Shown here: piece by piece, positions 42,375 to 57,559 of the stretch
How positions within the stretch are numbered: the stretch's first letter is position 1
How the letters are laid out: each line of letters starts with the position of its first letter
Source: Octopus bimaculoides
Taxonomy: Eukaryota
NCBI RefSeq assembly: GCF_001194135.2
Contig: NC_069001.1
Coordinates: 36,634,698 to 36,698,697 of the forward strand
Reading direction: 5' to 3'
DNA length: 64,000 nt
The notes under the pieces: generated by a model
The model's database searches: none
What the model saw: only the letters and a program-made list of their open reading frames with translations
What the model was told of the DNA's origin: nothing
Made by a program: the position numbers and the translations under genes

Positions 42375-42963
42375 GTAAGGTCACTCCATGACTGTTAGAT
42401 GGACGTTTTCAATTCCCTAACATTTGTCTTCTAAATTTGTCCAGTACACTCTGTAAAGTGGTTGGCATTAGGAATGGCAGAGATTTTATGGCTGGATGCC
42501 CTCCCTAACACCAACCACTCCGCAGAGTGGACTCAGTGCTTTTTATGTGGCACTAGCACAGGTAAGGTTAGTTTTGGCAGGATTTTTACGACTGGATGCC
42601 CTTCCAAATGCCAACCACATTACAGTGTGGACTGGATGCTTTTAACATGGCACCAGCACTAGCAGGGTAAACAAGGCATGTCATGTATCTATTAGAAGAA
42701 ACAGCCCAGTTACTTTCTCTAACATTCCAACCACACAAGTAAATGTGTGATGAACAAAATGGGAATTTTGAAAGAATATTTATGAAACTAGTTTATAAAC
42801 ATTGAATGGCCATGGAAATCCACCGGAATAAAACAGTGACCAAAGGGGTCCATACGTTAAAAAAATGGTTGAGAATCAGTGAGTTAAAGGATTAGCCATA
42901 TCTGTTGCTGACCCCTAAAAAAAAATTTTATAATAAAATCAGCTAATTTTTTATTTCTTTCAG

Positions 42964-43109
42964 GATCAGAAGCTCGTATAATTCGGCAAATGTCCTCAGA
43001 CAGCATGTCCAGTATCAACAGTTTGTCTAGTGCTTGCAGTGCTGCCAGCCAGCAGTCTGCTGCCACAGATGGTGACATCGGCAAGAAAAAGAACAAAAAG
43101 AAGGGCTGG
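42964..43109 (+). CDS. NAV2: NAV internal coding exon
   Basis: Flanked by tttctttcag and gtaaat. 146 nt, phase 1/0, reads (G)SEARIIRQMSSDSMSSINSLSSACSAASQQSAATDGDIGKKKNKKKGW, matching NAV IRRQHSSDSVSSINS...KKKKxxW. Confidence 0.92.
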
Positions 43110-43507
43110 GTAAATATTTTGGCTCTCTCCTTTCTTTTTACCTTTTCACATTATCACTCTGTCTCTCTTACACAAAAAGACCTACTCACAAACTATATAT
43201 ACGTCTGTATGTATGTATATATATGTACACACACACACATATACATATTGATTCTGTTATTGGTTTCAGCCAGTAGATGTGGCCATACTAGGGCACTGTC
43301 ATGAACACTAATGCTCATTTATTTTAGAAACCTTTCCTGATTCTTTCTCCAGAATTGGTCCTGGAGAATTCGTCACTCAAACAGAACTGCTCTCCTTCCT
43401 ATTTCTTGTCATATATCTACACACACACACACACACACGTTTTTCCATTGTGTTTGTTCTCTCTTTCTTTCACTCATTCCTTCTTTCTTTCTTTCTTTCT
43501 ATTTCAG

Positions 43508-43677
43508 CTGCGTAGTTCATTCAGTAAAGCCTTCTCTCGCAAAAAGAATAAACATGGATCTATGTCAGACGTGGAACCAGATACCACTAGTCTAAGATCT
43601 AATTGTTCTGCTCCAAATTCTCCTCTTTTACAACTTTCACATCTCAATGGCCCTGGATCTATCAAGGGGTCACATTC
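43508..43677 (+). CDS. NAV2: NAV internal coding exon, 3' end lost in assembly gap
   Basis: Polypyrimidine tract and atttcag acceptor. Reads LRSSFSKAFSRKKNKHGSMSDVEPDTTSLRSNCSAPNSPLLQLSHLNGPGSIKGSH; joined to the previous exon it gives W|LRSSFxKAF, the NAV hallmark. Runs into N at 43678. Confidence 0.92.
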
Positions 43678-45414: not shown

Positions 45415-46077
45415 AGACCTATTGTTGGCGTGTGGTCTGTGTGTAGTCTTGTTGCTAGTTTTCGGGTTAGTGGGCTAAGTGAGCACTTTCGGATCTATAA
45501 TTTCTTCATCAGAATTTACATTTTGTATGGTTGTTACTGCAGGCGTTGATTAGAAGCTGCATTAGTTAGAAGTTCCGGAGGCTGTAAATAAATTTCCAAC
45601 TGCCAAATTCGTTCCGGCGGTTGAGGCTGGGCGCCTTCTTCCTGATGAAATGAGCCGCCTTTATTCAGAGGTTGACTGCATCTGTTCCCCTGGCCAATAT
45701 CCGAGTGAAGAATTCTCCATCGCAGTGCTTGTGGTGTTGGAATATGGCGCTGGGTGTTGTGGCCTTGTGAAGATGTTCTTTCACTCTGACATGGGACTGT
45801 CGTTTGGTCGATCCAATATATTTATCTCTCCAAGTACAGGTCACTTCATGTATTACATTTGTCTGAAAACATAGCCTGGTACTGTTCGCTGGTTGTCTGG
45901 CCCTGATGGTGCATTAGTTCTAACAGGATGTGTTCCGTATGTTGTTGTGGAAGAGATGTTATCTTAGGGTGTGACCTCGCCTCGTGATTCTGAGAGGGAG
46001 GCCAGACTTTCTGACGACGTTCCTCAGTTGGTCTTCAACCTTTTTTCGATAGTACAGAAGGTTGATATATGTCCATC

Positions 46078-46116
<39 letters not shown>

Positions 46117-46950
46117 CCTGAGTCTGTATCCTCTACAGTACAGCATCCTGATGAAATTTTTCTTCACGTCGTCTTTTACATCAGCCTCGTCGCATCTATT
46201 TATGCGGTGGTTGAGCTCATTAAGGGCTACACTATGTTTCAATGTCTATGGGTATGCCGAATCCGAATGGAGGAAGTTGTCTTTCTTCGCCCCTTTCTCG
46301 AAGAAGAGGTTTGTGGCATGTCCCGATGTGAAGGATACGTTGAAGTCTAAGAGGCTCAGCGACTCATTTGCGGTTGAGTGTTCAATGTCGAATTGGATGT
46401 TGTGGAGTAGGTTGTTAAAGACATTATGGATCTTGATCGCCTCATCCCTGGATTTGGTTAAGACGAAGGCATCATCGATGTATCTCCGGTATAGGGTGAT
46501 GTGTCGTCCTGCGTGGAGTGCTTGGCGCTTCAGTTAGTCCAGGGTAAAGGCGGCCAGGATACCACTGAGTTTGGATCCCATTTGGAGGTTGCTGTGTTGT
46601 CAGTATGTGGTGTTTTTATACTGGAAGTATGTGCTAGCAGTGCAGAAATCCAGGATGAATTTGAGGCCTGCTGGTGGAAAGTCAGTGGCCAGCTTGTGGT
46701 TTCACTCTAGTCGCTCTTGGATTTCTAGTATAGCCTCAGCCGATGGTATGCTGGTATACATAGACTGTATGTCTAGGCTGAAGGGGTAGTTGTTGTCCGA
46801 GACGGTTCTGGGCGGAAGCTTACGTAGTAGCTCGATGAGTTGCCAGCTGTCCTCAAGGTGTGCTGGTATGTGTGCCAACAGTGACTTGAGGAGCCCTTCT
46901 ACAATTCATTCCATCTTCCGAAGTGGGGCGTACTTCGAGTTGCCCCAGGT
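45415..46950 (-). mobile_element. Decayed, 5'-truncated Penelope-like retroelement (RT + GIY-YIG endonuclease)
   Basis: Minus-strand translation gives PFSLDIQSMYTSIP, YFQYKNTTY*Q..LQMGSKLSGILA and YRRYIDDAF (PLE-type RT), then NVIHEVTC..DKYIGSTKR..HVRVKEH and EA.FIRKKAPSLNRRNE (GIY-YIG). Several stops and a (GA)n insertion near 46081-46111. Confidence 0.88.
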
Positions 46951-48337
46951 CGTTGGTTTCCTCGTGTGTTTTTATTTGGCAATAGAACAGCGAAAAAAAA
47001 AACTTTCCGGGTTTTCTCAAACGAGTATTACCAAAGACCTCCTCACGGTTCACTGTTTATATAAATATATTTATATTAATACCTCAGTTTCTCATCATCT
47101 TCAAGATGATTTTTATTTATTTATCTTTAATTTTTTTGAATATTTCTTAAATATTTTCTCTTTACGTTTTTCGTTTTTCATTCTTCATTCTTCATTTTTC
47201 AGTTTCCCAATTTTTCATTTTGTCGGTTCTCCACAGTTTTCTCTTCATTGCTCTATTCTACCATCTTTCCCCCTTAGCTCTTAGTTTCCCCATCGATAAA
47301 CCGCTACACTCCTCCCCCAGGTATCACCTCCTTCTACCTGTTCATTCTTTCCGCCTAACTCAACTTTACTTCTCTTAGCATAGTACCCCCTCTCACCATC
47401 CTACTACGGCGTCACCCTGTCACGCCTCTCTGTACTAGACCACAACCGTGTGGCCTGAAATACACCAATATCTTTTAGCTTCTATAACGTTTTTCATGCT
47501 CTTGCAAAAATGGTATGGTGTGAAGATAAATAGCAACCACAACTCATAGATTATTTTGGAGGTCACAAGTCTTGTCCGATACTTGCAATACAGTGGATTC
47601 AAAGTGACAATATCAAATCACGAAAGCATTAAATCCATCTCTGCAACAAAGAATGTTAACAAATGGGTGAACAGTAAGAAACTGAGCTCAAATCACTGAA
47701 TTAATGCTGCTAGCCATTACACAATAATAGAACTTTTTATTGTTAATAAATAAGCGGTGAGCTGGCAGAATCGTTAGAACCGCCGGACAAAATATTTAGC
47801 AGCATTTCCACCGGCTTAACGTTCTGAGCTCGAATTCTGCCGTGGTCGACTTTGCCTCTCATTCTATTGGAGTTGATAAAATCATGTACCAGTTGAGTTG
47901 TTGGATCGATGTAATTGACTAAACCACCATCAATTTAATTTAGGCTCTTTACGTTCTGAGTTCAAGTTTCGATGCGGTTATCTGCGTCATTCATCCCACA
48001 GAGGTTGACAAAATAATATGCAGTCAAGTACTTGGGTCGTCTATATCTACTATATACTCGACCCAATTTTTTCTTTTTTTTTATCAAGCAAATATTAGAA
48101 GTCAGGAATTAAGGAGGTGTACTTGCCAGGCAACCAATTTAATTTAAGACAGTGTGTTGAAACTAATTCCACGATTGCAGCGTGGAAGGCACGTGTTAGC
48201 CATTCAGAAACACAGCGATGACTTCAGTTAAACATTTACTGTTTGTATCGTGGTATCAAAAGTTCTCTCACTCGAAACTGCGACCCTGTCACTGACAATG
48301 TTACGCTGCACCTAATCATATCCAGAATTTTGCAACC

Positions 48338-50596: not shown

Positions 50597-50814
50597 TGTA
50601 TGTATGTATGCATGTATGTATGTATGTATGTATGCCCATGCTTGTGTGTATGTGTCTGTGTTTGTGCTTATACTAATGTCTATGCAAGCTTATATGTACA
50701 GAGAGGGAGAGAAGGAAAGAGAGAAATATTAAAGGTCCTAGTGGGTTTCAGTGTTTCCCTTGTTTTGTTTTGTTTTTTTCATAAGACTCTACAATTGGTT
50801 CAAAGTAATATATG

Positions 50815-50865
50815 ATAATAATAATAATAATAGTAATAATGATAATAATAATAATAATAATAATA

Positions 50866-50920
<55 letters not shown>

Positions 50921-50960
50921 TAATAATAATAATAATAATAATAATAGTAGTAGTAAGTAG
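50815..50960. repeat. (TAA)n/(TAG)n microsatellite, representative of dozens of simple repeats
   Basis: Direct reading. Other long examples: (AT)n 541-637, mixed AT/GT 30620-31030, (TAA)n 22178-22265. Confidence 0.95.
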
Positions 50961-51344
50961 TAGTAGTAGTAGATTATTTTGTTGTTCTTGTTTGTTTCGT
51001 GTTATTAAGTGGAGTATGTGTATTACTTCGCCTTTTCTTTCTTTTTTTTTTTATTTTTTCAAGCCAAAGGGTTAACCGAAACCACCTCTCTCGAGAGAAA
51101 GAGAAGATGAAGAAAAAAAAAACATGAAAGAAAGCATGGAAGAACCAAAATGATTCTTCAAGTATTAAGCTGCTGCAGAAAGAGAGTGAATTATAAACAT
51201 AACCGAATGTCTGGAGGCCACGTTTGAATATTCTGAGATATTGATTGAATGGAGATGATGTTTTTTTTGTTTTCTTTTCTTTTTTCTTTTTTTTTTTAAC
51301 ATGGTGGCTTTTGCATGGAACAATAATGCAAATGTGATCGTAAG

Positions 51345-54214
51345 TTAGTTTTTAGAAAACCGTGATTTTAATTCCTTCTTTAGTAGTTTCAATAAGAACA
51401 TGATAAAGTCATCGTCGTCATCATAGACACTTTTCAGTTGTTTGATGAATGAATCTATTTCTGTAGGATTAAATTCTTTTTCGATACCTTCCCTTTCTTC
51501 TTGCGTAGAAGAGTGGATTTGCCTAGAAATATTCATTGTTATTTTTAGTGGTGGCTTGTCGCCTGCTATTTTATAAGAAGTCAGCGATGGCGACTTTGTG
51601 CTTTGTGGCTTGCTATAGTCTTTCTTTGTACTTTCTGCTGATTCTGATTCATTGCTCTCATCATTAGCTAATGCATTTGTGAAGCCAGCCGATGAATTTG
51701 TAATAGTTATATTGGTCATAAAGAGTGGTTTCATGATCTCATTTAAGTCTTTATCAACCTGAGAGAATTTTTCGTCCATTTCATTGGATTCATCTTCTTT
51801 CTTTGACCTTTTAGTTGTTATGTTCAAATGTACCCCATGCTTACGGTTATGCTTTTTGCCATGGGCTTTCGTCTTTGGCGCTTTTGGTTTGATTGAAATG
51901 TGATGTTTATTCCCCTTTTTTACATGACGCACCTTAATGGTGGCCAGTAATTTCTTTTTCTGCGCTTTCGATTTCGTTTTTTTACGAGCAAACCAAGTAC
52001 CTTTTTTCTCTTTTCCCTTTTCTATGTGTTTTTTTGGATCTACCATACTCAACTTTTCACCTCCATTGTCATTATCGTCTTCATCCCGGTCGGAGACTGT
52101 GGGCAAGCTTATATCGCCATCGGAAACACAGATTAGTTTGGTGCCAGATTTTATTTTAATTGTTTTACATTTATCATCACCATTATCATTGTCGCCATCC
52201 TCCCCTTCATCCTCCTCCTCATCGTCGTCATCTTCATCGTCACTGTCGTCGTCTTCCCCATTATCACCTTCCTCGCCATTTTCATCATCGCCATTTTCTT
52301 CATCACCATTCTCTCCTTCATCACCATTTTCTTCATCACTATCATCATCCTCATCATCATTATTATCATCATCACCATTTTCGTCATCACCGTTATCCTC
52401 ACCTCCATTAGAGCTCTCCTCGCTTTCCTCTTCTTCCTCCCCCTCCCCTTCCTCTTCGTTCTCCTCGCTCTCTTCCGCCTCTTTCCCATTGGTTCCTTTG
52501 CTATTTTTTATTTTCACGGCAACTTTTATTTTCTTGTGTTTTGACTTTGATTTTCCTGCTTTACCATTATGTCCATTTAGTTTCGCTTTTATTCTAACTT
52601 TGTGTACTCTGTGAGATTTTTCACCATCTTTGCCATCCTCTTCATTCGTGGACTTTGCAGACGCAGATTTCTTTCCGTGTTTACCATTATTGCCCAAACG
52701 AATATTCACAGTTGTTGCATTTTTCCTTACCTTCGATTTACTCATTGCGCCCCCTTCCTCCTCCTCTTCGTCTTCCTGATCTTCCTCTTGTTCGTTCTCG
52801 TCCTCCTCTTCATCATCACCATTATCATCATCAATTTCACCAGCACCATTATCACCGTTGCCATTCCCATTTTCGTCGTCGTCGTCGTCATCATCATCAT
52901 CATCATCACTATCAGAACCACCGGTATCCTCATTTTTATTACCGTTAAAGCCATCTTTACAATTACCATTAAAACAATTATCATTACCATTACCGCCGCC
53001 ATTATCATCATCATCATCATCATCCTCATCATCGCCGTCACTGCTGTTGTCCTCTCCTTCTTCATCAACGACACCCATACCTAGCTCTGGTTCTCCTAAT
53101 TTCATTTGCATCGGATCGTCTTCATCCTCTTCTTCTTCTTCGTCTTCTTCTGATTCTTCATCACTCTCCTCTTCTCCGCTCTCTTTCGCATTTTCAGCCA
53201 CTTTCTTTTCTGTTTCTTCCTCTTTCTCCGACGATTCTTCACTTTCCTCTTCTCCCCCATCCTCATCATCATCCTCATTTTCCTCTTCTTTGGTAGCTTC
53301 GGCGCTTACGATTTTGCTTCCTGCCTCACTCGACGCATCAGCACCGCTTTGACTGGCCTTGCTATCCGCGTCTTCACTATCTTCTCCACCATCCTCATCA
53401 TTACCGAATCCTTGAGACAAATCGCTATCATCAATAAGGAATTTTGATTGTCCTCGACTTTCACGCATGTTACCAATATCTTTCACATTAATATCTATGA
53501 AGTTGTCGCTATGTCGCTTCATTCCATTACTATGCACAGTATTAGTCCTGGTTCTTTTAGGAATTGGAGTTTCAAGCACTGTATCTCTATATGGATCTTC
53601 AACCCCTATCGGATCTGCTTTCGATAAAATATTGCCATATTTAATCTCATCAAGTAGTCCTTTCAAAACTTTATTTCCGTTATCTAACGCTTGACTCATA
53701 TGAAAAATGTTACCAGGTCCGATATTATCAAAACTTTTGGTAATATCACTCTTGAACGGTAATGAGAATATTCTTTCTGTAAGTATTTTTCCATTGTCGG
53801 TTATGTTTTTAACGTTCTGTTCACTGTCTAGCCTCTCGTGGGTATCAATATTTGATACCAGGTTGCTATCAGGTCCTATATCTTTTATCATGAAAACCTT
53901 AAAGGAATTTTTGCCGTTGAGATAAGCGTTCTTTTTTTCTATAAGATAGTTGATCTTCTGGTCAAATCTCTCGCCTTCCTCGAAGAGTTTATTCATGGTC
54001 CTCATACCAAGTTTGTAATCGTTTGTCCAGTGTGAAGAGCCGACGTTTGGCGTGAACATCTGTCCACGATGTGGTTCATAGCTGACCTCGTTTGTGACTG
54101 TTGCCTTGGTTTCTAAGTCATTAAAGAAGTGACTTGTTGGAACTCGCGGATGGCCCATATTGTACTTGTCGTTTTCAGGTATCTCAGCAGATGAACTTGA
54201 ATCGGTTTCGTCGG
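51345..54214 (-). CDS. Large terminal exon of an unrecognised Asp/Glu-rich and Lys/His-rich low-complexity protein, probably secreted
   Basis: 937-codon stop-free ORF (54158-51345). The frame stays open 56 nt further upstream (xCC-DETDSSSSAEIPENDKYN-M) to a tttatttatttatttag acceptor (AG at 54216-54215). Non-repetitive N-terminal ~250 aa and an ordered C-terminus. Such a long open frame in AT-rich DNA is very unlikely by chance. Confidence 0.85.
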
Positions 54215-54429
54215 CTAAATAAATAAATAAATGAAATTATTAATAATCGTAACTGATTTAATTTCATATCATTTAAACAGAAAAGAAAAGCATTGTGATG
54301 GGAGAATAGTTAGATAGACATAGAAAATTCTCTTTGGGTACTTAGAAAATTCAATCTCAGCGGTATTTGAACTCAGAACGCAGAGACAGACGAAATGCCG
54401 CTAAGCATTTTCCCTGGTCTTCTAACAAT

Positions 54430-55286: not shown

Positions 55287-56676
55287 TTAATAGTTCATAT
55301 ATGCTTCTAATTCTCTATATTCCATCACTGGCGGCAGTTCGTCAAACTCCACCTCAAATCCCGGTGGACCGATATCCCTTCCAAACATTTCCTTTAACCT
55401 GTTATACCTCTCTTTATCTATAACAATTGCTTTCACATTTTCCATGTAAATCTCCGTAGGCAACTTTAACTCTTATTATGGAATTAGACTTCGTTATTTT
55501 TTTTCTATCGCCGTGCTCTTGGCGTATGTTACGAAATTCCACTTATGCTTCTTCGGTTTTCTCACCTGTTTGTTTTTTTCTTTGCTCCACTCTTGGCGCC
55601 TTCACTCAGTCTTTATCCTCCTCCATTTTAGTTAGTGTCACTGCTTCACTTTCATGCTGTTGTCTCTCTAAACCACCCAAATCTTCTTCCTCCGCTAGTA
55701 TGGCTAGTACCCTTGCTACTGTCACCTCTTTCTCAGTCTCCTCCTCAATCTCCTTTTCAAGCTCCTTATCCTCTGCTATTTTTTCTGCCTCTCCGTCGGA
55801 GAGCTTACTCTTTCTTTTCTTTTTTGTTTTTTAACCACTGTGAACACTCCCTCTGTTATTACCGTCTCCTTCATACCATCTTGTACCACTTCGTCCACTT
55901 TCTCTTGCTCTTCAGACTGTTCCATCTGTTGTTCCTCCTCTCTCTGGGGTCACCTCGCCTTCATGTAGCCTTTTCTCCACATTGTTAACATATAGGAGGC
56001 CTGCCCTCCGCTACTACTCTCGGCCTCACATCCTCGGGTAAAACTATTTCCTCCACAATTTTATTTAATTCTCTCAAACCCGCTTATATGGCCATCTCTA
56101 TGCTACAACCCCACAAATTCAACCTTTTGGTTCTCGTCACTTTAAGCATTTTTGCGTCCTCCTCCATGTTAAACACTACTGCTGTTACCAACCCTGTTTC
56201 ATTCATTTCCGGGGGCACCCCTCCCATCCAACCCCCGGCAACACACCCACCACAGCACGTTGGCAAAAGTACTCATTCCTCCGTCCTTATGGCCACTGTG
56301 GAGCGCCTCATCGCTCCACCCCCAGTCGCGAACCGCAATTCCACCGTGCCACACCTTCCTCTTCCTGTGATGAAAGTGGTGAACCCTCCAGCTTCCTTCA
56401 GATACTCTTCAATGGCTTCAACAGTTGCAATCACAACCTTCGGGATAACACCTTCAGTGTTTTATATATCACTGTTCCCCATCTTACACCATTTGTTAGT
56501 TCATCTGGTGGCGCTAATTCTAAGGCATGGCCCACCCACCTCAATAACCCTTCGCACTCTTTCAGCTTCTTCGGTTCCACCCTCACCTCACGAACCTCCA
56601 AAGTGTCAGAGTCCACTCCTCTGCCAGCCACCACCGCCGCCGCACAACTGTGGCCCTTTACTGGTCCAATTTCCAT
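55287..56676 (-). mobile_element. Degenerate ORF1/gag-like frame of a non-LTR (L1/Tx1-like) element, no ORF2 seen
   Basis: Frameshifted minus-strand frame from ATG 56676 to TAA 55287. Contains GTVELRFAT, ..RVVAEGRPPIC*QCGEK.Y.KAR*P (decayed CCHC knuckle) and a Glu/Lys-rich tail, followed by A-rich sequence. Confidence 0.6.
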
Positions 56677-56865: not shown

Positions 56866-57559
56866 TGCGTACTTTCGTACTTCATGTACTTCTCTTTACT
56901 TATAGTAACTAGGTTATTTCATTCATCACGTGGGAGGGGTGCGTCATTTTTACTAATCCCCTACAACATCTCCCCTTTTAAATTTTTCATGGGAAATGTC
57001 ATTTCGAGAAACTATCAACTACCACTAAGTAGTACGAACCATTTAAAGGACCAGCGAAATCGATTTGTAGTCTCGACCACGGAACATCTACTTTTGGCTA
57101 AGGTTCACTTTTTATAGTGGGCAATTTTGCTGCTAGAGCCTTTCACTAAATTTTCGATTTCTTTGTCCATTTTCGGCCAGTATACGTAGCTACACATTAA
57201 AGCTTTCATCCTTGTAATACCAGGATGTCCGACGTGAAATTCTCTCACCATTTTGTTTGTAGTGTTTCCGGTATCACTACTCTCTGTTCATATATCAGCA
57301 TGCCATCACACATTGAGTATAGATTCACGTCTTGGTTTCGTTTCACACCAAACCTATTCCTGTTTTCTTTTGTGGAACACAGTGTTCTTTTTGTTTCCTT
57401 TATAAACTGGTCTTTTACACGACAAAATTAACTCCGATACGAATATCTCAAACCGCCTAATACGTACTTTCGTACTTCACGTGCTTCCCTTTACTTATAG
57501 TGACTATGTTATTCTGTTCGTCACATGAAAGGGACCATTATTAATAATTCCCTACAACA
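56866..57559 (-). mobile_element. Miniature Ty3/Gypsy LTR element (TRIM-like) with integrase remnant
   Basis: Direct repeats of about 100 bp (57461-57559 and 56866-56968) start TGTTGTAGGG on -. A polypurine tract AAAAGGGGAGA (56979-56969) abuts the 3' LTR. The interior reads RVVIPETLQ..EFHVGHPGITRMKAL..YVYWPKMDKEIE...PWSRLQIDFAGPLNGSYYLVVVDSFSK. Confidence 0.85.

What the first reader, a model, noticed from the sequence alone, without database searches (positions are those of the whole stretch)
51345..54214. Unrecognised ~955-codon acidic exon: candidate secreted biomineral (statolith) matrix protein
Seen: one stop-free frame with poly-Asp and poly-Glu tracts, ENGD/DNGD and Asn-Gly repeats, many S-x-E motifs (e.g. 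EESEEESSEK, ESGEEESDEESEED), at least eight N-x-S/T sequons (NIT x3, NSS x2, NAT, NES, NIS) and KR dibasic sites in the N-terminal part. No globular domain is recognisable. Established: Asp-rich disordered secreted proteins (bivalve Aspein/Asprich, zebrafish otolith Starmaker, vertebrate SIBLING/DSPP) control CaCO3 or apatite growth; S-x-E is the FAM20C kinase consensus; nacrein carries Gly-X-Asn repeats. Inference: in a shell-less coleoid this could be a lineage-specific matrix protein of the aragonitic statolith or another secreted extracellular structure.
Basis: partly seen in the sequence, partly recalled or inferred. Interest (0 to 1): 0.85.

Follow-up and report, generated by a model that had tools for sequence, protein, structure and literature searches.

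The report
Octopus-only secreted acidic protein gene
The long open frame is real: it is the main coding exon of an already annotated but unstudied Octopus bimaculoides gene for a secreted, very acidic, mostly unstructured protein found so far only in octopuses, and nothing yet links it to the statolith.

Summary
The frame is real. It lies on the minus strand (54214..51345): 955 codons plus TAA, behind a T-rich tract and an AG acceptor. It is not unrecognised. It is exon 2 of 2 of an annotated O. bimaculoides gene (XP_014785381.1 / A0A0L8G0Z6, 992 aa), auto-named "dentin sialophosphoprotein".

O. sinensis and O. vulgaris keep the same intact 955-codon exon, and all indels are in frame. The mature protein is about 107 kDa, pI 4.4, net charge -132. 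It alternates two polyacidic blocks (-98, -66) with two Lys/His-rich blocks (+21, +23). No Pfam domain, PDB relative or confident AlphaFold fold was found. The searches that worked found no relatives outside Octopus.

Asn-Gly and [DE]NG[DE] repeats are strongly enriched. S-x-E, N-x-S/T and KR counts are at chance level for this composition. There are no DSS repeats, so it is not DSPP.

Best reading: a lineage-restricted, fast-evolving, secreted cation-binding polyampholyte. Tissue and function are untested, and the statolith role remains speculation.

The parts
51348..54214 (-). Coding part of exon 2 (the last exon) of the O. bimaculoides gene for XP_014785381.1. It covers residues 37 (split codon) to 992.
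   Evidence: 100% identity to P0001 residues 37-992.
51345..51347 (-). Stop codon TAA.
54215..54245 (-). 3' splice site: a T-rich tract (ttcatttatttatttatttag) ending in AG at 54216-54215. The intron is phase 1 and 16,092 nt long. Exon 1 (ATG, signal peptide, GT donor) lies outside the window, at window-equivalent 70307-70415 (= L001:10001-10109).
53412..54214 (-). N-terminal region, residues 37-304, net charge -7. It is the most conserved part: 95% nt identity to O. sinensis and 89% aa identity. A helix is weakly predicted at residues 100-136.
52746..53411 (-). Acidic block 1, residues 305-526: 49% D+E, net -98, with D7 and D11 runs and NGNGN / DNG repeats.
52488..52745 (-). Basic block 1, residues 527-612, net +21. 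It has alternating hydrophobic/Lys strand-like motifs (HKVRIKAKL, KIKVAVKIK) and the NAT sequon.
52173..52487 (-). Acidic block 2, residues 613-717: 64% D+E, net -66. It is made of imperfect tandem (E/D)NGD(D/E) repeats; the DNA period is 15-33 nt.
51789..52172 (-). Basic block 2, residues 718-845, net +23, Lys/His-rich. It begins with the conserved two-Cys motif CKTIKIKSGTKLIC (52128-52169), which is weakly predicted to be a beta-hairpin.
51348..51788 (-). C-terminal region, residues 846-992. It has four conserved N-x-S/T sequons (a fifth, NES, is not conserved) and an S/T-rich stretch. Two conserved helices (residues 953-989, 51357-51467) flank a D5 run.
51050..51055 (-). AATAAA, a candidate polyadenylation signal about 290 nt after the stop codon.

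Best explanation
Shown. Window 54214..51345 (minus strand) is the large second and last exon of a two-exon O. bimaculoides gene that is already annotated. Exon 1 supplies an N-terminal signal peptide. The product enters the secretory pathway and has no second hydrophobic segment, no KDEL/HDEL-type ending and no hydrophobic C-terminus, so it is most likely released as a soluble protein. The mature protein is about 107 kDa, pI 4.4, net charge -132. It has a moderately conserved N-terminal region, then polyacidic / basic / polyacidic / basic blocks, then a glycosylation-prone tail ending in two conserved helices. Detectable relatives were found only in Octopus, and amino-acid identity is weakly constrained.

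Inferred mechanism. The carboxylate-dense blocks act as low-affinity, high-capacity binders of Ca2+ or other cations. The Lys/His-rich strand-like blocks can pair electrostatically with the acidic blocks of the same or neighbouring chains. The protein would therefore behave as a self-condensing (coacervating) polyampholyte whose state depends on Ca2+ and pH. The N-terminal region and C-terminal helices would serve as anchoring or oligomerisation ends. That behaviour suits an extracellular matrix, mineral-associated, adhesive, egg-coat or secretory-granule material. Sequence alone cannot say which tissue uses it.
For: Gene model and identity.
Splice sites.
Signal peptide as the only hydrophobic segment (mean Kyte-Doolittle hydropathy 2.12 over residues 7-22; best 19-residue window elsewhere 0.65).
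Intact orthologous 955-codon exons with only in-frame indels in O. sinensis and O. vulgaris.
Charge-block architecture.
Enrichment of NG and [DE]NG[DE].
No Pfam domain, no PDB sequence relative, no confident AF2 structure (pLDDT 34 full length, 40 N-terminal region), no structural match.
Octopus-only hits: full length; exhaustive HMMER with the C-terminal 274 aa against 1.84 billion representatives; the one other hit, P0004, is a spurious bacterial repeat protein.
Precedent: an acidic shell protein undergoes Ca2+-induced coacervation that stabilises amorphous CaCO3 (Pif80, PMC5540247). That Pif80 is also rich in basic residues is from my memory; the passages read did not state it.
Against: No expression, localisation or biochemical data were obtainable, so the mechanism rests on composition only. 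A signal anchor rather than a cleaved signal peptide cannot be excluded, because the uncharged stretch runs from V7 to I31. The low AF2 confidence may reflect the three-sequence alignment rather than true disorder. dN/dS of about 0.7-1 outside the acidic blocks, and a C-terminal third that diverges faster than flanking non-coding DNA, show little constraint on exact sequence. That is compatible with a bulk-charge function but also with a marginal one. Both homology searches with the N-terminal region failed to return even the known Octopus proteins. The claim of no relatives therefore rests on the full-length and C-terminal searches only.
Confidence: 0.5

Rival explanations
1. One reading: a biomineral matrix protein, specifically of the aragonitic statolith. 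It would be secreted by the statocyst macula and would control CaCO3 nucleation and growth through its Asp/Glu blocks.
For: It has a signal peptide, polyacidic blocks and enriched NG/DNG repeats, and is predicted to be unstructured. Known otolith regulators (Starmaker, Stm-l) are secreted acidic IDPs with no sequence similarity to one another, so lack of homology does not count against this reading (PMC4260845). Cephalopod statolith matrix proteins are still largely uncharacterised, so the niche is open (PMC6597576).
Against: There is no link to the statocyst or to any mineral. S-x-E sites are not enriched, Ser is only 8.7%, and there are no DSS repeats. About a fifth of the protein is strongly basic. 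Acidic low-complexity secreted proteins are common outside mineralised tissues. A distant signal-peptide exon (16 kb away in O. bimaculoides, about 26 kb in O. sinensis) appears in the models of both species. This suggests transcript support from the tissue sets used for annotation, and I have no evidence that these included statocyst (inference).
Confidence: 0.12
2. A protein of the regulated secretory pathway. It could be a granin-like granule-condensing Ca2+ buffer, or a polyprotein precursor in which the acidic blocks neutralise cationic peptides (for example the disulfide-closed CKTIKIKSGTKLIC hairpin and the Lys/His-rich segments) that are released as antimicrobial or toxic peptides.
For: It has a signal peptide and alternating polyanionic and polycationic blocks. 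It has a conserved two-Cys cationic hairpin motif and amphipathic C-terminal helices. The basic and C-terminal parts evolve fast (dN/dS about 1), and the C-terminal third diverges faster than flanking non-coding DNA, p = 0.0014. That pattern is typical of immune or venom effectors (my own knowledge).
Against: Dibasic KR sites are at chance frequency and only 1 of 3 is conserved. There is no granin Pfam match. No tissue data exist.
Confidence: 0.15
3. A reproductive or adhesive secretion, such as an egg coat or egg-stalk cement from the oviducal gland, a spermatophore component, or skin or sucker mucus. The oppositely charged blocks would drive complex coacervation and setting.
For: It is secreted, is a block polyampholyte, has N-glycosylation sequons conserved in the C-terminal part, is restricted to the lineage and evolves quickly.
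Against: This is purely compositional reasoning. There are no DOPA/Tyr-rich, mucin-type PTS or chitin-binding modules (Y is 1.0%; Pfam finds nothing).
Confidence: 0.15
4. An intracellular (nuclear or nucleolar) acidic/basic protein of the nucleolin or nucleoplasmin kind, or an ER/SR-resident Ca2+ buffer of the calsequestrin or HRC kind.
For: Alternating D/E and K-rich blocks resemble nucleolar proteins. Luminal Ca2+ buffers are also acidic and carry a signal peptide (my own knowledge).
Against: A conserved N-terminal signal sequence argues against a nuclear location. The protein ends in ...SRFSKN, with no KDEL/HDEL-type retrieval ending. There is no significant similarity to any such protein.
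Confidence: 0.05
5. Not a functional gene: an open frame kept by chance in GA-rich low-complexity DNA.
For: The low-complexity DNA also gives spurious antisense and off-frame ORFs of 110-225 aa. dN/dS is high.
Against: About 550 of the 955 codons are not low-complexity. P of such an open frame by chance is about 1e-23. The frame is intact with only in-frame indels in three species, despite about 8% divergence in flanking non-coding DNA. The two-exon structure with a signal-peptide exon is conserved.
Confidence: 0.02

Closest known systems
Vertebrate dentin sialophosphoprotein (DSPP, SIBLING/SCPP family), the name NCBI's pipeline gave this protein
   Same: Both have a signal peptide, are very acidic, are predicted to be disordered, and would be expected to bind Ca2+.
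   Different: There are no (Asp-Ser-Ser)n repeats (DSS occurs once), Ser is only 8.7%, and there is no RGD. No significant similarity was found to any non-Octopus protein. The gene has two exons with a phase-1 intron. The name reflects composition, not homology.
Fish otolith regulators Starmaker / Starmaker-like / OMM-64
   Same: These are secreted acidic IDPs that control aragonite or CaCO3 ear stones. Family members share no detectable sequence similarity and were identified by expression and knock-down (PMC4260845).
   Different: Those proteins are Ser-rich and heavily phosphorylated. This one has Ser at 8.7%, has S-x-E at chance level and carries two strongly basic blocks. Expression in a balance organ has not been shown.
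Molluscan acidic shell-matrix proteins: Aspein/Asprich (poly-Asp), nacrein and N16/pearlin (Gly-X-Asn / NG repeats), Pif80 (acidic; rich in Asp, Lys and Arg as I recall it)
   Same: It shares poly-Asp runs and NG/GN repeats. It shares acidic and basic clusters in one chain, as in Pif80, which coacervates with Ca2+ and stabilises amorphous CaCO3 (PMC5540247). The comparisons with Aspein, Asprich, nacrein and N16, and Pif80's basic content, come from my own knowledge.
   Different: Asp is only 13.4% overall (D+E 27%), against more than 50% Asp in Aspein (my own knowledge). There is no carbonic-anhydrase, VWA or chitin-binding domain. The organism has no shell. No homology was detected.
Granins (chromogranin A/B, secretogranins)
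   Same: They are acidic, hydrophilic secretory proteins that bind Ca2+ with high capacity and condense in granules (my own knowledge).
   Different: There is no granin Pfam match. Dibasic sites are neither enriched nor conserved. The protein is much larger and has long homopolymeric D/E runs.

Membership tests
DSPP / SIBLING (SCPP) | Significant sequence similarity to DSPP or other SCPP members | tested here: not met
   the full-length query gave only three hits at E <= 0.001, all from Octopus (8000 candidates were scored); no Pfam family.
DSPP / SIBLING (SCPP) | Phosphophoryn-type (Asp-Ser-Ser)n repeats and a high Ser content | tested here: not met
   DSS occurs once, SSD once, and Ser is 8.7%.
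DSPP / SIBLING (SCPP) | N-terminal signal peptide | tested here: met
   This was judged by features, not with SignalP.
FAM20C-substrate secretory phosphoproteins | Enrichment of S-x-E/pS motifs | tested here: not met
   15 observed against 11.4 +/- 3.0 expected from composition (p = 0.16). Ten of the 15 are conserved in the three species, no more than the overall identity predicts.
Asp-rich shell-matrix proteins (Aspein/Asprich type) | Signal peptide plus long poly-Asp blocks | tested here: met
   runs of D7, D11, D5 and D4.
Asp-rich shell-matrix proteins (Aspein/Asprich type) | Asp makes up most of the mature protein | tested here: not met
   D 13.4%, E 13.6%, K 10.9%.
Asp-rich shell-matrix proteins (Aspein/Asprich type) | Expressed by a mineralising epithelium and occluded in the mineral | not testable with these tools
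   No expression or proteome data could be reached. No paper cites the accessions.
Otolith/statolith acidic IDPs (Starmaker-like, by function) | Secreted, acidic, intrinsically disordered | tested here: inconclusive
   The signal peptide and pI of 4.4 are met. Disorder is only suggested by AF2 pLDDT of 34 on a three-sequence alignment and GRAVY of -1.43.
Otolith/statolith acidic IDPs (Starmaker-like, by function) | Expressed in the balance-organ epithelium, with loss of function altering the crystal | not testable with these tools
   This needs in situ hybridisation, RNA-seq or knock-out.
Granins | Granin domain or motif and multiple conserved dibasic processing sites | tested here: not met
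   no Pfam hit. KR is 3 against 2.6 expected; only PIPKR is conserved.
Nuclear/nucleolar acidic proteins (nucleolin, nucleoplasmin, NOLC1 type) | No signal peptide, and recognisable RRM, nucleoplasmin or SRP40 domains | tested here: not met
   A signal sequence is present and conserved. There are no Pfam domains.
ER/SR luminal Ca2+ buffers (calsequestrin, HRC, calreticulin) | Thioredoxin-like or calreticulin domains, or a C-terminal KDEL-type retrieval signal | tested here: not met
   no domain; the C-terminus is ...KSRFSKN.

The most novel reading that the evidence does not exclude
This gene encodes a molecularly identified matrix protein of a cephalopod statolith, or of another octopus mineral or condensate. 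It would be an octopus-born block polyampholyte that converged on the Starmaker/DSPP/Pif80 way of controlling CaCO3 through Ca2+-driven condensation.
Probability: 0.1. Interest if true: 0.7.

Novelty: new member of a known kind. Interest (0 to 1): 0.3.

Why it matters
If its tissue and role were established, it would be a clean example of a taxonomically restricted gene that builds a secreted material from charge blocks alone. It would also be a concrete candidate for the largely uncharacterised organic matrix of cephalopod statoliths (PMC6597576). As it stands, the practical value is corrective. The database name "dentin sialophosphoprotein" reflects composition only. The O. sinensis and O. 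vulgaris gene models are truncated or chimeric relative to an intact 955-codon exon. The motif arguments (S-x-E, sequons, KR) carry no statistical weight.

Tried and rejected
1. Two homologous-protein searches with the N-terminal region, one with a single sequence and one with a three-species alignment, returned nothing. They did not even return P0001-P0003, which contain the query, so their silence is uninformative and I do not use it as evidence of absence.

2. The exhaustive HMMER search with the C-terminal 274 aa gave one non-Octopus hit, P0004. It is a 4582-aa bacterial Big_9/cadherin-like repeat protein that scores by summing a weak 37-residue match over more than 20 repeats. I rejected it as spurious.

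3. PDB sequence searches with the N- and C-terminal regions found nothing below E = 0.17.

4. AlphaFold2 gave pLDDT 40 for the N-terminal region and 34 for the full length. Foldseek of the N-terminal model against the PDB gave a best E of 0.23 and TM below 0.2, which is meaningless.

6. A search for internal repeats between the two basic blocks, and between the N- and C-terminal regions, found none.

7. Exon 1 was sought in the window and is not there.

8. Literature searches found nothing relevant. No paper holds the accessions. 'Dentin sialophosphoprotein' plus 'octopus' gave only irrelevant papers. One broad search was badly designed and useless. The Argonauta eggcase paper does not mention such a protein. 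The 2015 octopus genome paper is not held.

9. Pfam scans of the other open frames in the window identified only one retrotransposon integrase fragment.
Full report
**1. The observation**

The window holds one outstanding open frame. It is on the minus strand from 54214 down to 51345 and comprises 955 sense codons plus TAA. Directly upstream lies a T-rich tract ending in AG (ttcatttatttatttatttag|CC), which is a canonical 3' splice site.

With the window's own stop-codon frequency (5.4% of codons over six frames), a 955-codon stop-free run has P about 1e-23. The ORFs of 110-225 aa on the plus strand and in the other minus-strand frames of the same interval (S-rich on the plus strand, Met/Lys/Arg-rich off-frame) are by-products of the GA-rich low-complexity DNA.

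**2. Identity**

The exon product matches one database protein at 100% identity over its whole length. That protein is P0001 = XP_014785381.1 / XP_014785382.1 / UniProt A0A0L8G0Z6 of Octopus bimaculoides, 992 aa. NCBI names it 'dentin sialophosphoprotein' and UniProt calls it 'uncharacterized'. The window is 100% identical to chromosome CM046621.1 of assembly GCA_001194135.2. The exon is therefore not unrecognised.

The gene has two coding exons. Exon 1 (L001:10001-10109) holds the ATG, 36 codons and one further base, and is followed by GTGAGT. It lies 16,092 nt upstream of exon 2, about 6.3 kb beyond the window's end, and is absent from the window.

Exon 1 encodes MVTTSKVILLSAFLLSVVTQLWCAPIPIITIGNQQH. 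This has a short n-region containing Lys, a 16-residue uncharged h-region (mean Kyte-Doolittle hydropathy 2.12), and small residues (C23, A24) followed by prolines. It is the only hydrophobic segment in the protein: the best 19-residue window elsewhere scores 0.65, against 1.95 here. It differs by one residue in O. sinensis. I read it as a cleavable signal peptide, with cleavage probably after C23. SignalP was not available, and a signal anchor cannot be strictly excluded. The C-terminus (...KSRFSKN) has no KDEL-type or GPI-type signal.

**3. Conservation**

O. sinensis (XP_036361564.1, 753 aa) and O. vulgaris (CAI9729108.1, 773 aa) were the only other hits. Their genomic loci each contain an intact exon of 955 codons downstream of the acceptor, within a 963-codon stop-free stretch. 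These exons have the same architecture and only in-frame indels. Each locus also has a signal-peptide exon about 26-27 kb upstream.

Both annotated models differ from this intact exon. The O. sinensis model is shorter because it splices out part of the low-complexity core. The O. vulgaris model does the same and also replaces the signal exon with an unrelated ORF from the far upstream end of the locus, 21 kb beyond the signal-peptide exon; that ORF looks like retroelement gag to my eye but was not scanned.

Nucleotide identity between O. bimaculoides and O. sinensis is as follows:
- 91.4% in the 1.3 kb of intron next to the exon;
- 91.8% in the 3' flank;
- 95.1% in the N-terminal coding region;
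- 88.0% in the C-terminal coding region.

The C-terminal third has more mismatches than the non-coding proxy (10.1% against 6.5%, Fisher p = 0.0014). The N-terminal region does not differ significantly from the proxy.

Nei-Gojobori dN/dS values are as follows:
- 0.67 overall;
- 0.85 in the N-terminal region, where dS is only 0.058;
- about 1.0 in the basic blocks and C-terminal region;
- 0.35-0.5 in the acidic blocks, where the alignment is least certain.

So the frame and architecture are under selection, but the exact residues are only weakly constrained, and the C-terminal part is fast-evolving.

**4. Anatomy of the protein**

The mature chain of 969 aa is about 107 kDa, with pI 4.4, GRAVY -1.43, 262 D+E, 130 K+R and net charge -132. 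The blocks are:

| Block | Residues | Net charge | Notes |
|---|---|---|---|
| N-terminal region | 24-304 | -7 | most conserved part |
| Acidic block 1 | 305-526 | -98 | 49% D+E |
| Basic block 1 | 527-612 | +21 | |
| Acidic block 2 | 613-717 | -66 | 64% D+E |
| Basic block 2 | 718-845 | +23 | Lys/His-rich |
| C-terminal region | 846-992 | -5 | |

Acidic block 2 is made of degenerate tandem repeats of the type (E/D)NGD(D/E), with a DNA period of 15-33 nt. The basic blocks contain alternating hydrophobic/Lys motifs with the highest beta-type hydrophobic moments in the protein (KVRIKAKLN, KIKVAVKIK, KLLATIKVR). They also contain a conserved two-Cys motif, CKTIKIKSGTKLIC. The C-terminus carries two conserved helices around a D5 run (EIDSFIKQLKSVYDDDDDFIMFLLKLLKKELKSRF).

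AlphaFold2 gives no confident structure: mean pLDDT is 34 for the full length and 40 for the N-terminal region. It sketches only the signal helix, a helix at residues 100-136, a hairpin at 719-732 and the C-terminal helices. With only three close sequences in the alignment, this is weak evidence of disorder. Pfam, PDB sequence search and Foldseek found nothing. No internal sequence repeat links the two basic blocks.

**5.

NG is enriched (27 against 7.4 +/- 2.4), and so is [DE]NG[DE] (9 against 0.6). Homopolymer runs are present: D7, D11, D5, D4 and three E5.

S-x-E (15 against 11.4 +/- 3.0, p = 0.16), N-x-S/T (8 against 10.7) and KR (3 against 2.6) are what this composition gives by chance. 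Only one KR site is conserved. DSS occurs once and RGD never. The FAM20C and prohormone arguments therefore have no statistical support. The NG/DNG repeats are the only short motif that stands out.

**6. Relatives**

The full-length search found only Octopus proteins, but only the 8000 candidates sharing the most words were scored. The exhaustive HMMER search with the non-repetitive C-terminal 274 aa, against 1.84 billion cluster representatives, found only the Octopus cluster and a spurious bacterial repeat protein.

Two searches with the N-terminal region returned nothing at all, not even the known Octopus proteins, and are therefore uninformative. Which cephalopod proteomes the libraries contain is unknown to me. 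'Octopus-restricted' thus means 'no detectable relative below 50% identity in these libraries'.

**7. What it most likely is and does**

Shown: this is a real, annotated, two-exon gene for a signal-peptide-bearing, highly charged, low-complexity protein that is conserved in architecture within Octopus.

Inferred: it is a soluble secreted polyampholyte. Its acidic blocks would bind Ca2+ or other cations with low affinity and high capacity. Its basic blocks would allow intra- and intermolecular charge pairing, giving cation- and pH-dependent condensation. This is the behaviour shown experimentally for the acidic nacre protein Pif80 (PMC5540247).

This mechanism is shared by several biological settings, including a mineral matrix, a granule core, an adhesive and an egg coat. 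The sequence does not choose among them. The statolith reading is legitimate for three reasons:
- otolith regulators are secreted acidic IDPs without mutual sequence similarity (PMC4260845);
- cephalopod statolith matrix proteins are essentially uncharacterised (PMC6597576);
- the protein passed the signal-peptide test.

It has no positive evidence, however. I put it at about 0.1, the generic 'secreted cation-binding polyampholyte' statement at about 0.5, and the remainder on the rivals listed.

**8. Comparison and novelty**

This is not DSPP: there are no DSS repeats, no similarity, and the taxon and gene family are wrong. It is not a member of the granins or of any Pfam family. It belongs to the known kind 'secreted acidic low-complexity proteins', as a lineage-restricted new member with an unusual, regular alternation of polyanionic and polycationic blocks.

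The gene model is already public but, as far as the library shows, it has never been discussed. Interest is modest (0.3). It would rise sharply with a single expression or proteomic result.

Noticed in passing
window 53079-53080 and 52854-52855 (GT donors), 52097-52098 (AG acceptor), minus strand; L002 and L003 equivalents: The shorter O. sinensis and O. vulgaris gene models remove the acidic/basic core through in-frame internal splice sites. The donors are CTAG|GTATGG and AACG|GTGAT, and both models share the acceptor CCCACAG|TC. All three sites are conserved in O. bimaculoides, where splicing would delete 328 or 253 codons. This could be a real alternatively spliced internal intron that produces isoforms without the charged core, or it could be an annotation artefact in repetitive sequence.
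   Followed up: partly
window 57108-57287, minus strand (inside the 16 kb intron): An open frame matches the Pfam Integrase_H2C2 zinc-binding domain (E = 2.8e-11). It is a fragment of an LTR retrotransposon.
   Followed up: yes
window 45537-47056, minus strand: Several adjoining open frames carry a reverse-transcriptase-like YIDDAFVL motif and a GIY-YIG-like KYIGSTKRQSHVRVKEHL motif, which suggests a decayed Penelope-like retroelement. Pfam gave no hit on the three pieces tested.
   Followed up: partly
window 55290-55949, minus strand (intron, about 1.1-1.7 kb upstream of the exon): There are open frames of 57-74 codons, two of them K/E-rich. They include ...NVKAIVIDKERYNRLKEMFGRDIGPPGFEVEFDELPPVMEYRELEAYMNY. 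The lower part of the interval (up to about 55500) lies in the 1.3 kb intron stretch that is 91% identical in O. sinensis. There is no Pfam match and no called gene, so the identity is unknown.
   Followed up: partly
L003:9896-12185 (O. vulgaris locus): The annotated O. vulgaris protein CAI9729108.1 begins with about 145 residues from an upstream ORF that looks like retroelement gag and RT/integrase, spliced onto the exon in place of the true signal-peptide exon. The true exon is present at L003:31094-31201. The model is chimeric.
   Followed up: partly
window ~42900-43672, plus strand: These are the terminal exons of a convergent neighbouring gene (1196-aa product in the assembly's annotation, 3' end near 43672). 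It includes the Ser-rich ...SFSKAFSRKKNKHGSMSDVEPDTTSLRSNCSAPNSPLL. No Pfam hit was found on the pieces tested.
   Followed up: partly
window 50800-50970 and throughout: A long (ATT/TAA)n microsatellite lies about 400-550 nt 3' of the stop codon. The window is otherwise full of (TA)n/(CA)n microsatellites (the YIYI/HTHT pseudo-ORFs) and at least ten assembly gaps of N.
   Followed up: no
(tool behaviour): the search for homologous proteins with the N-terminal 271 aa, alone or as a three-species alignment, did not return the proteins that contain this sequence exactly. For this query, the tool's negative results cannot be trusted.
   Followed up: no
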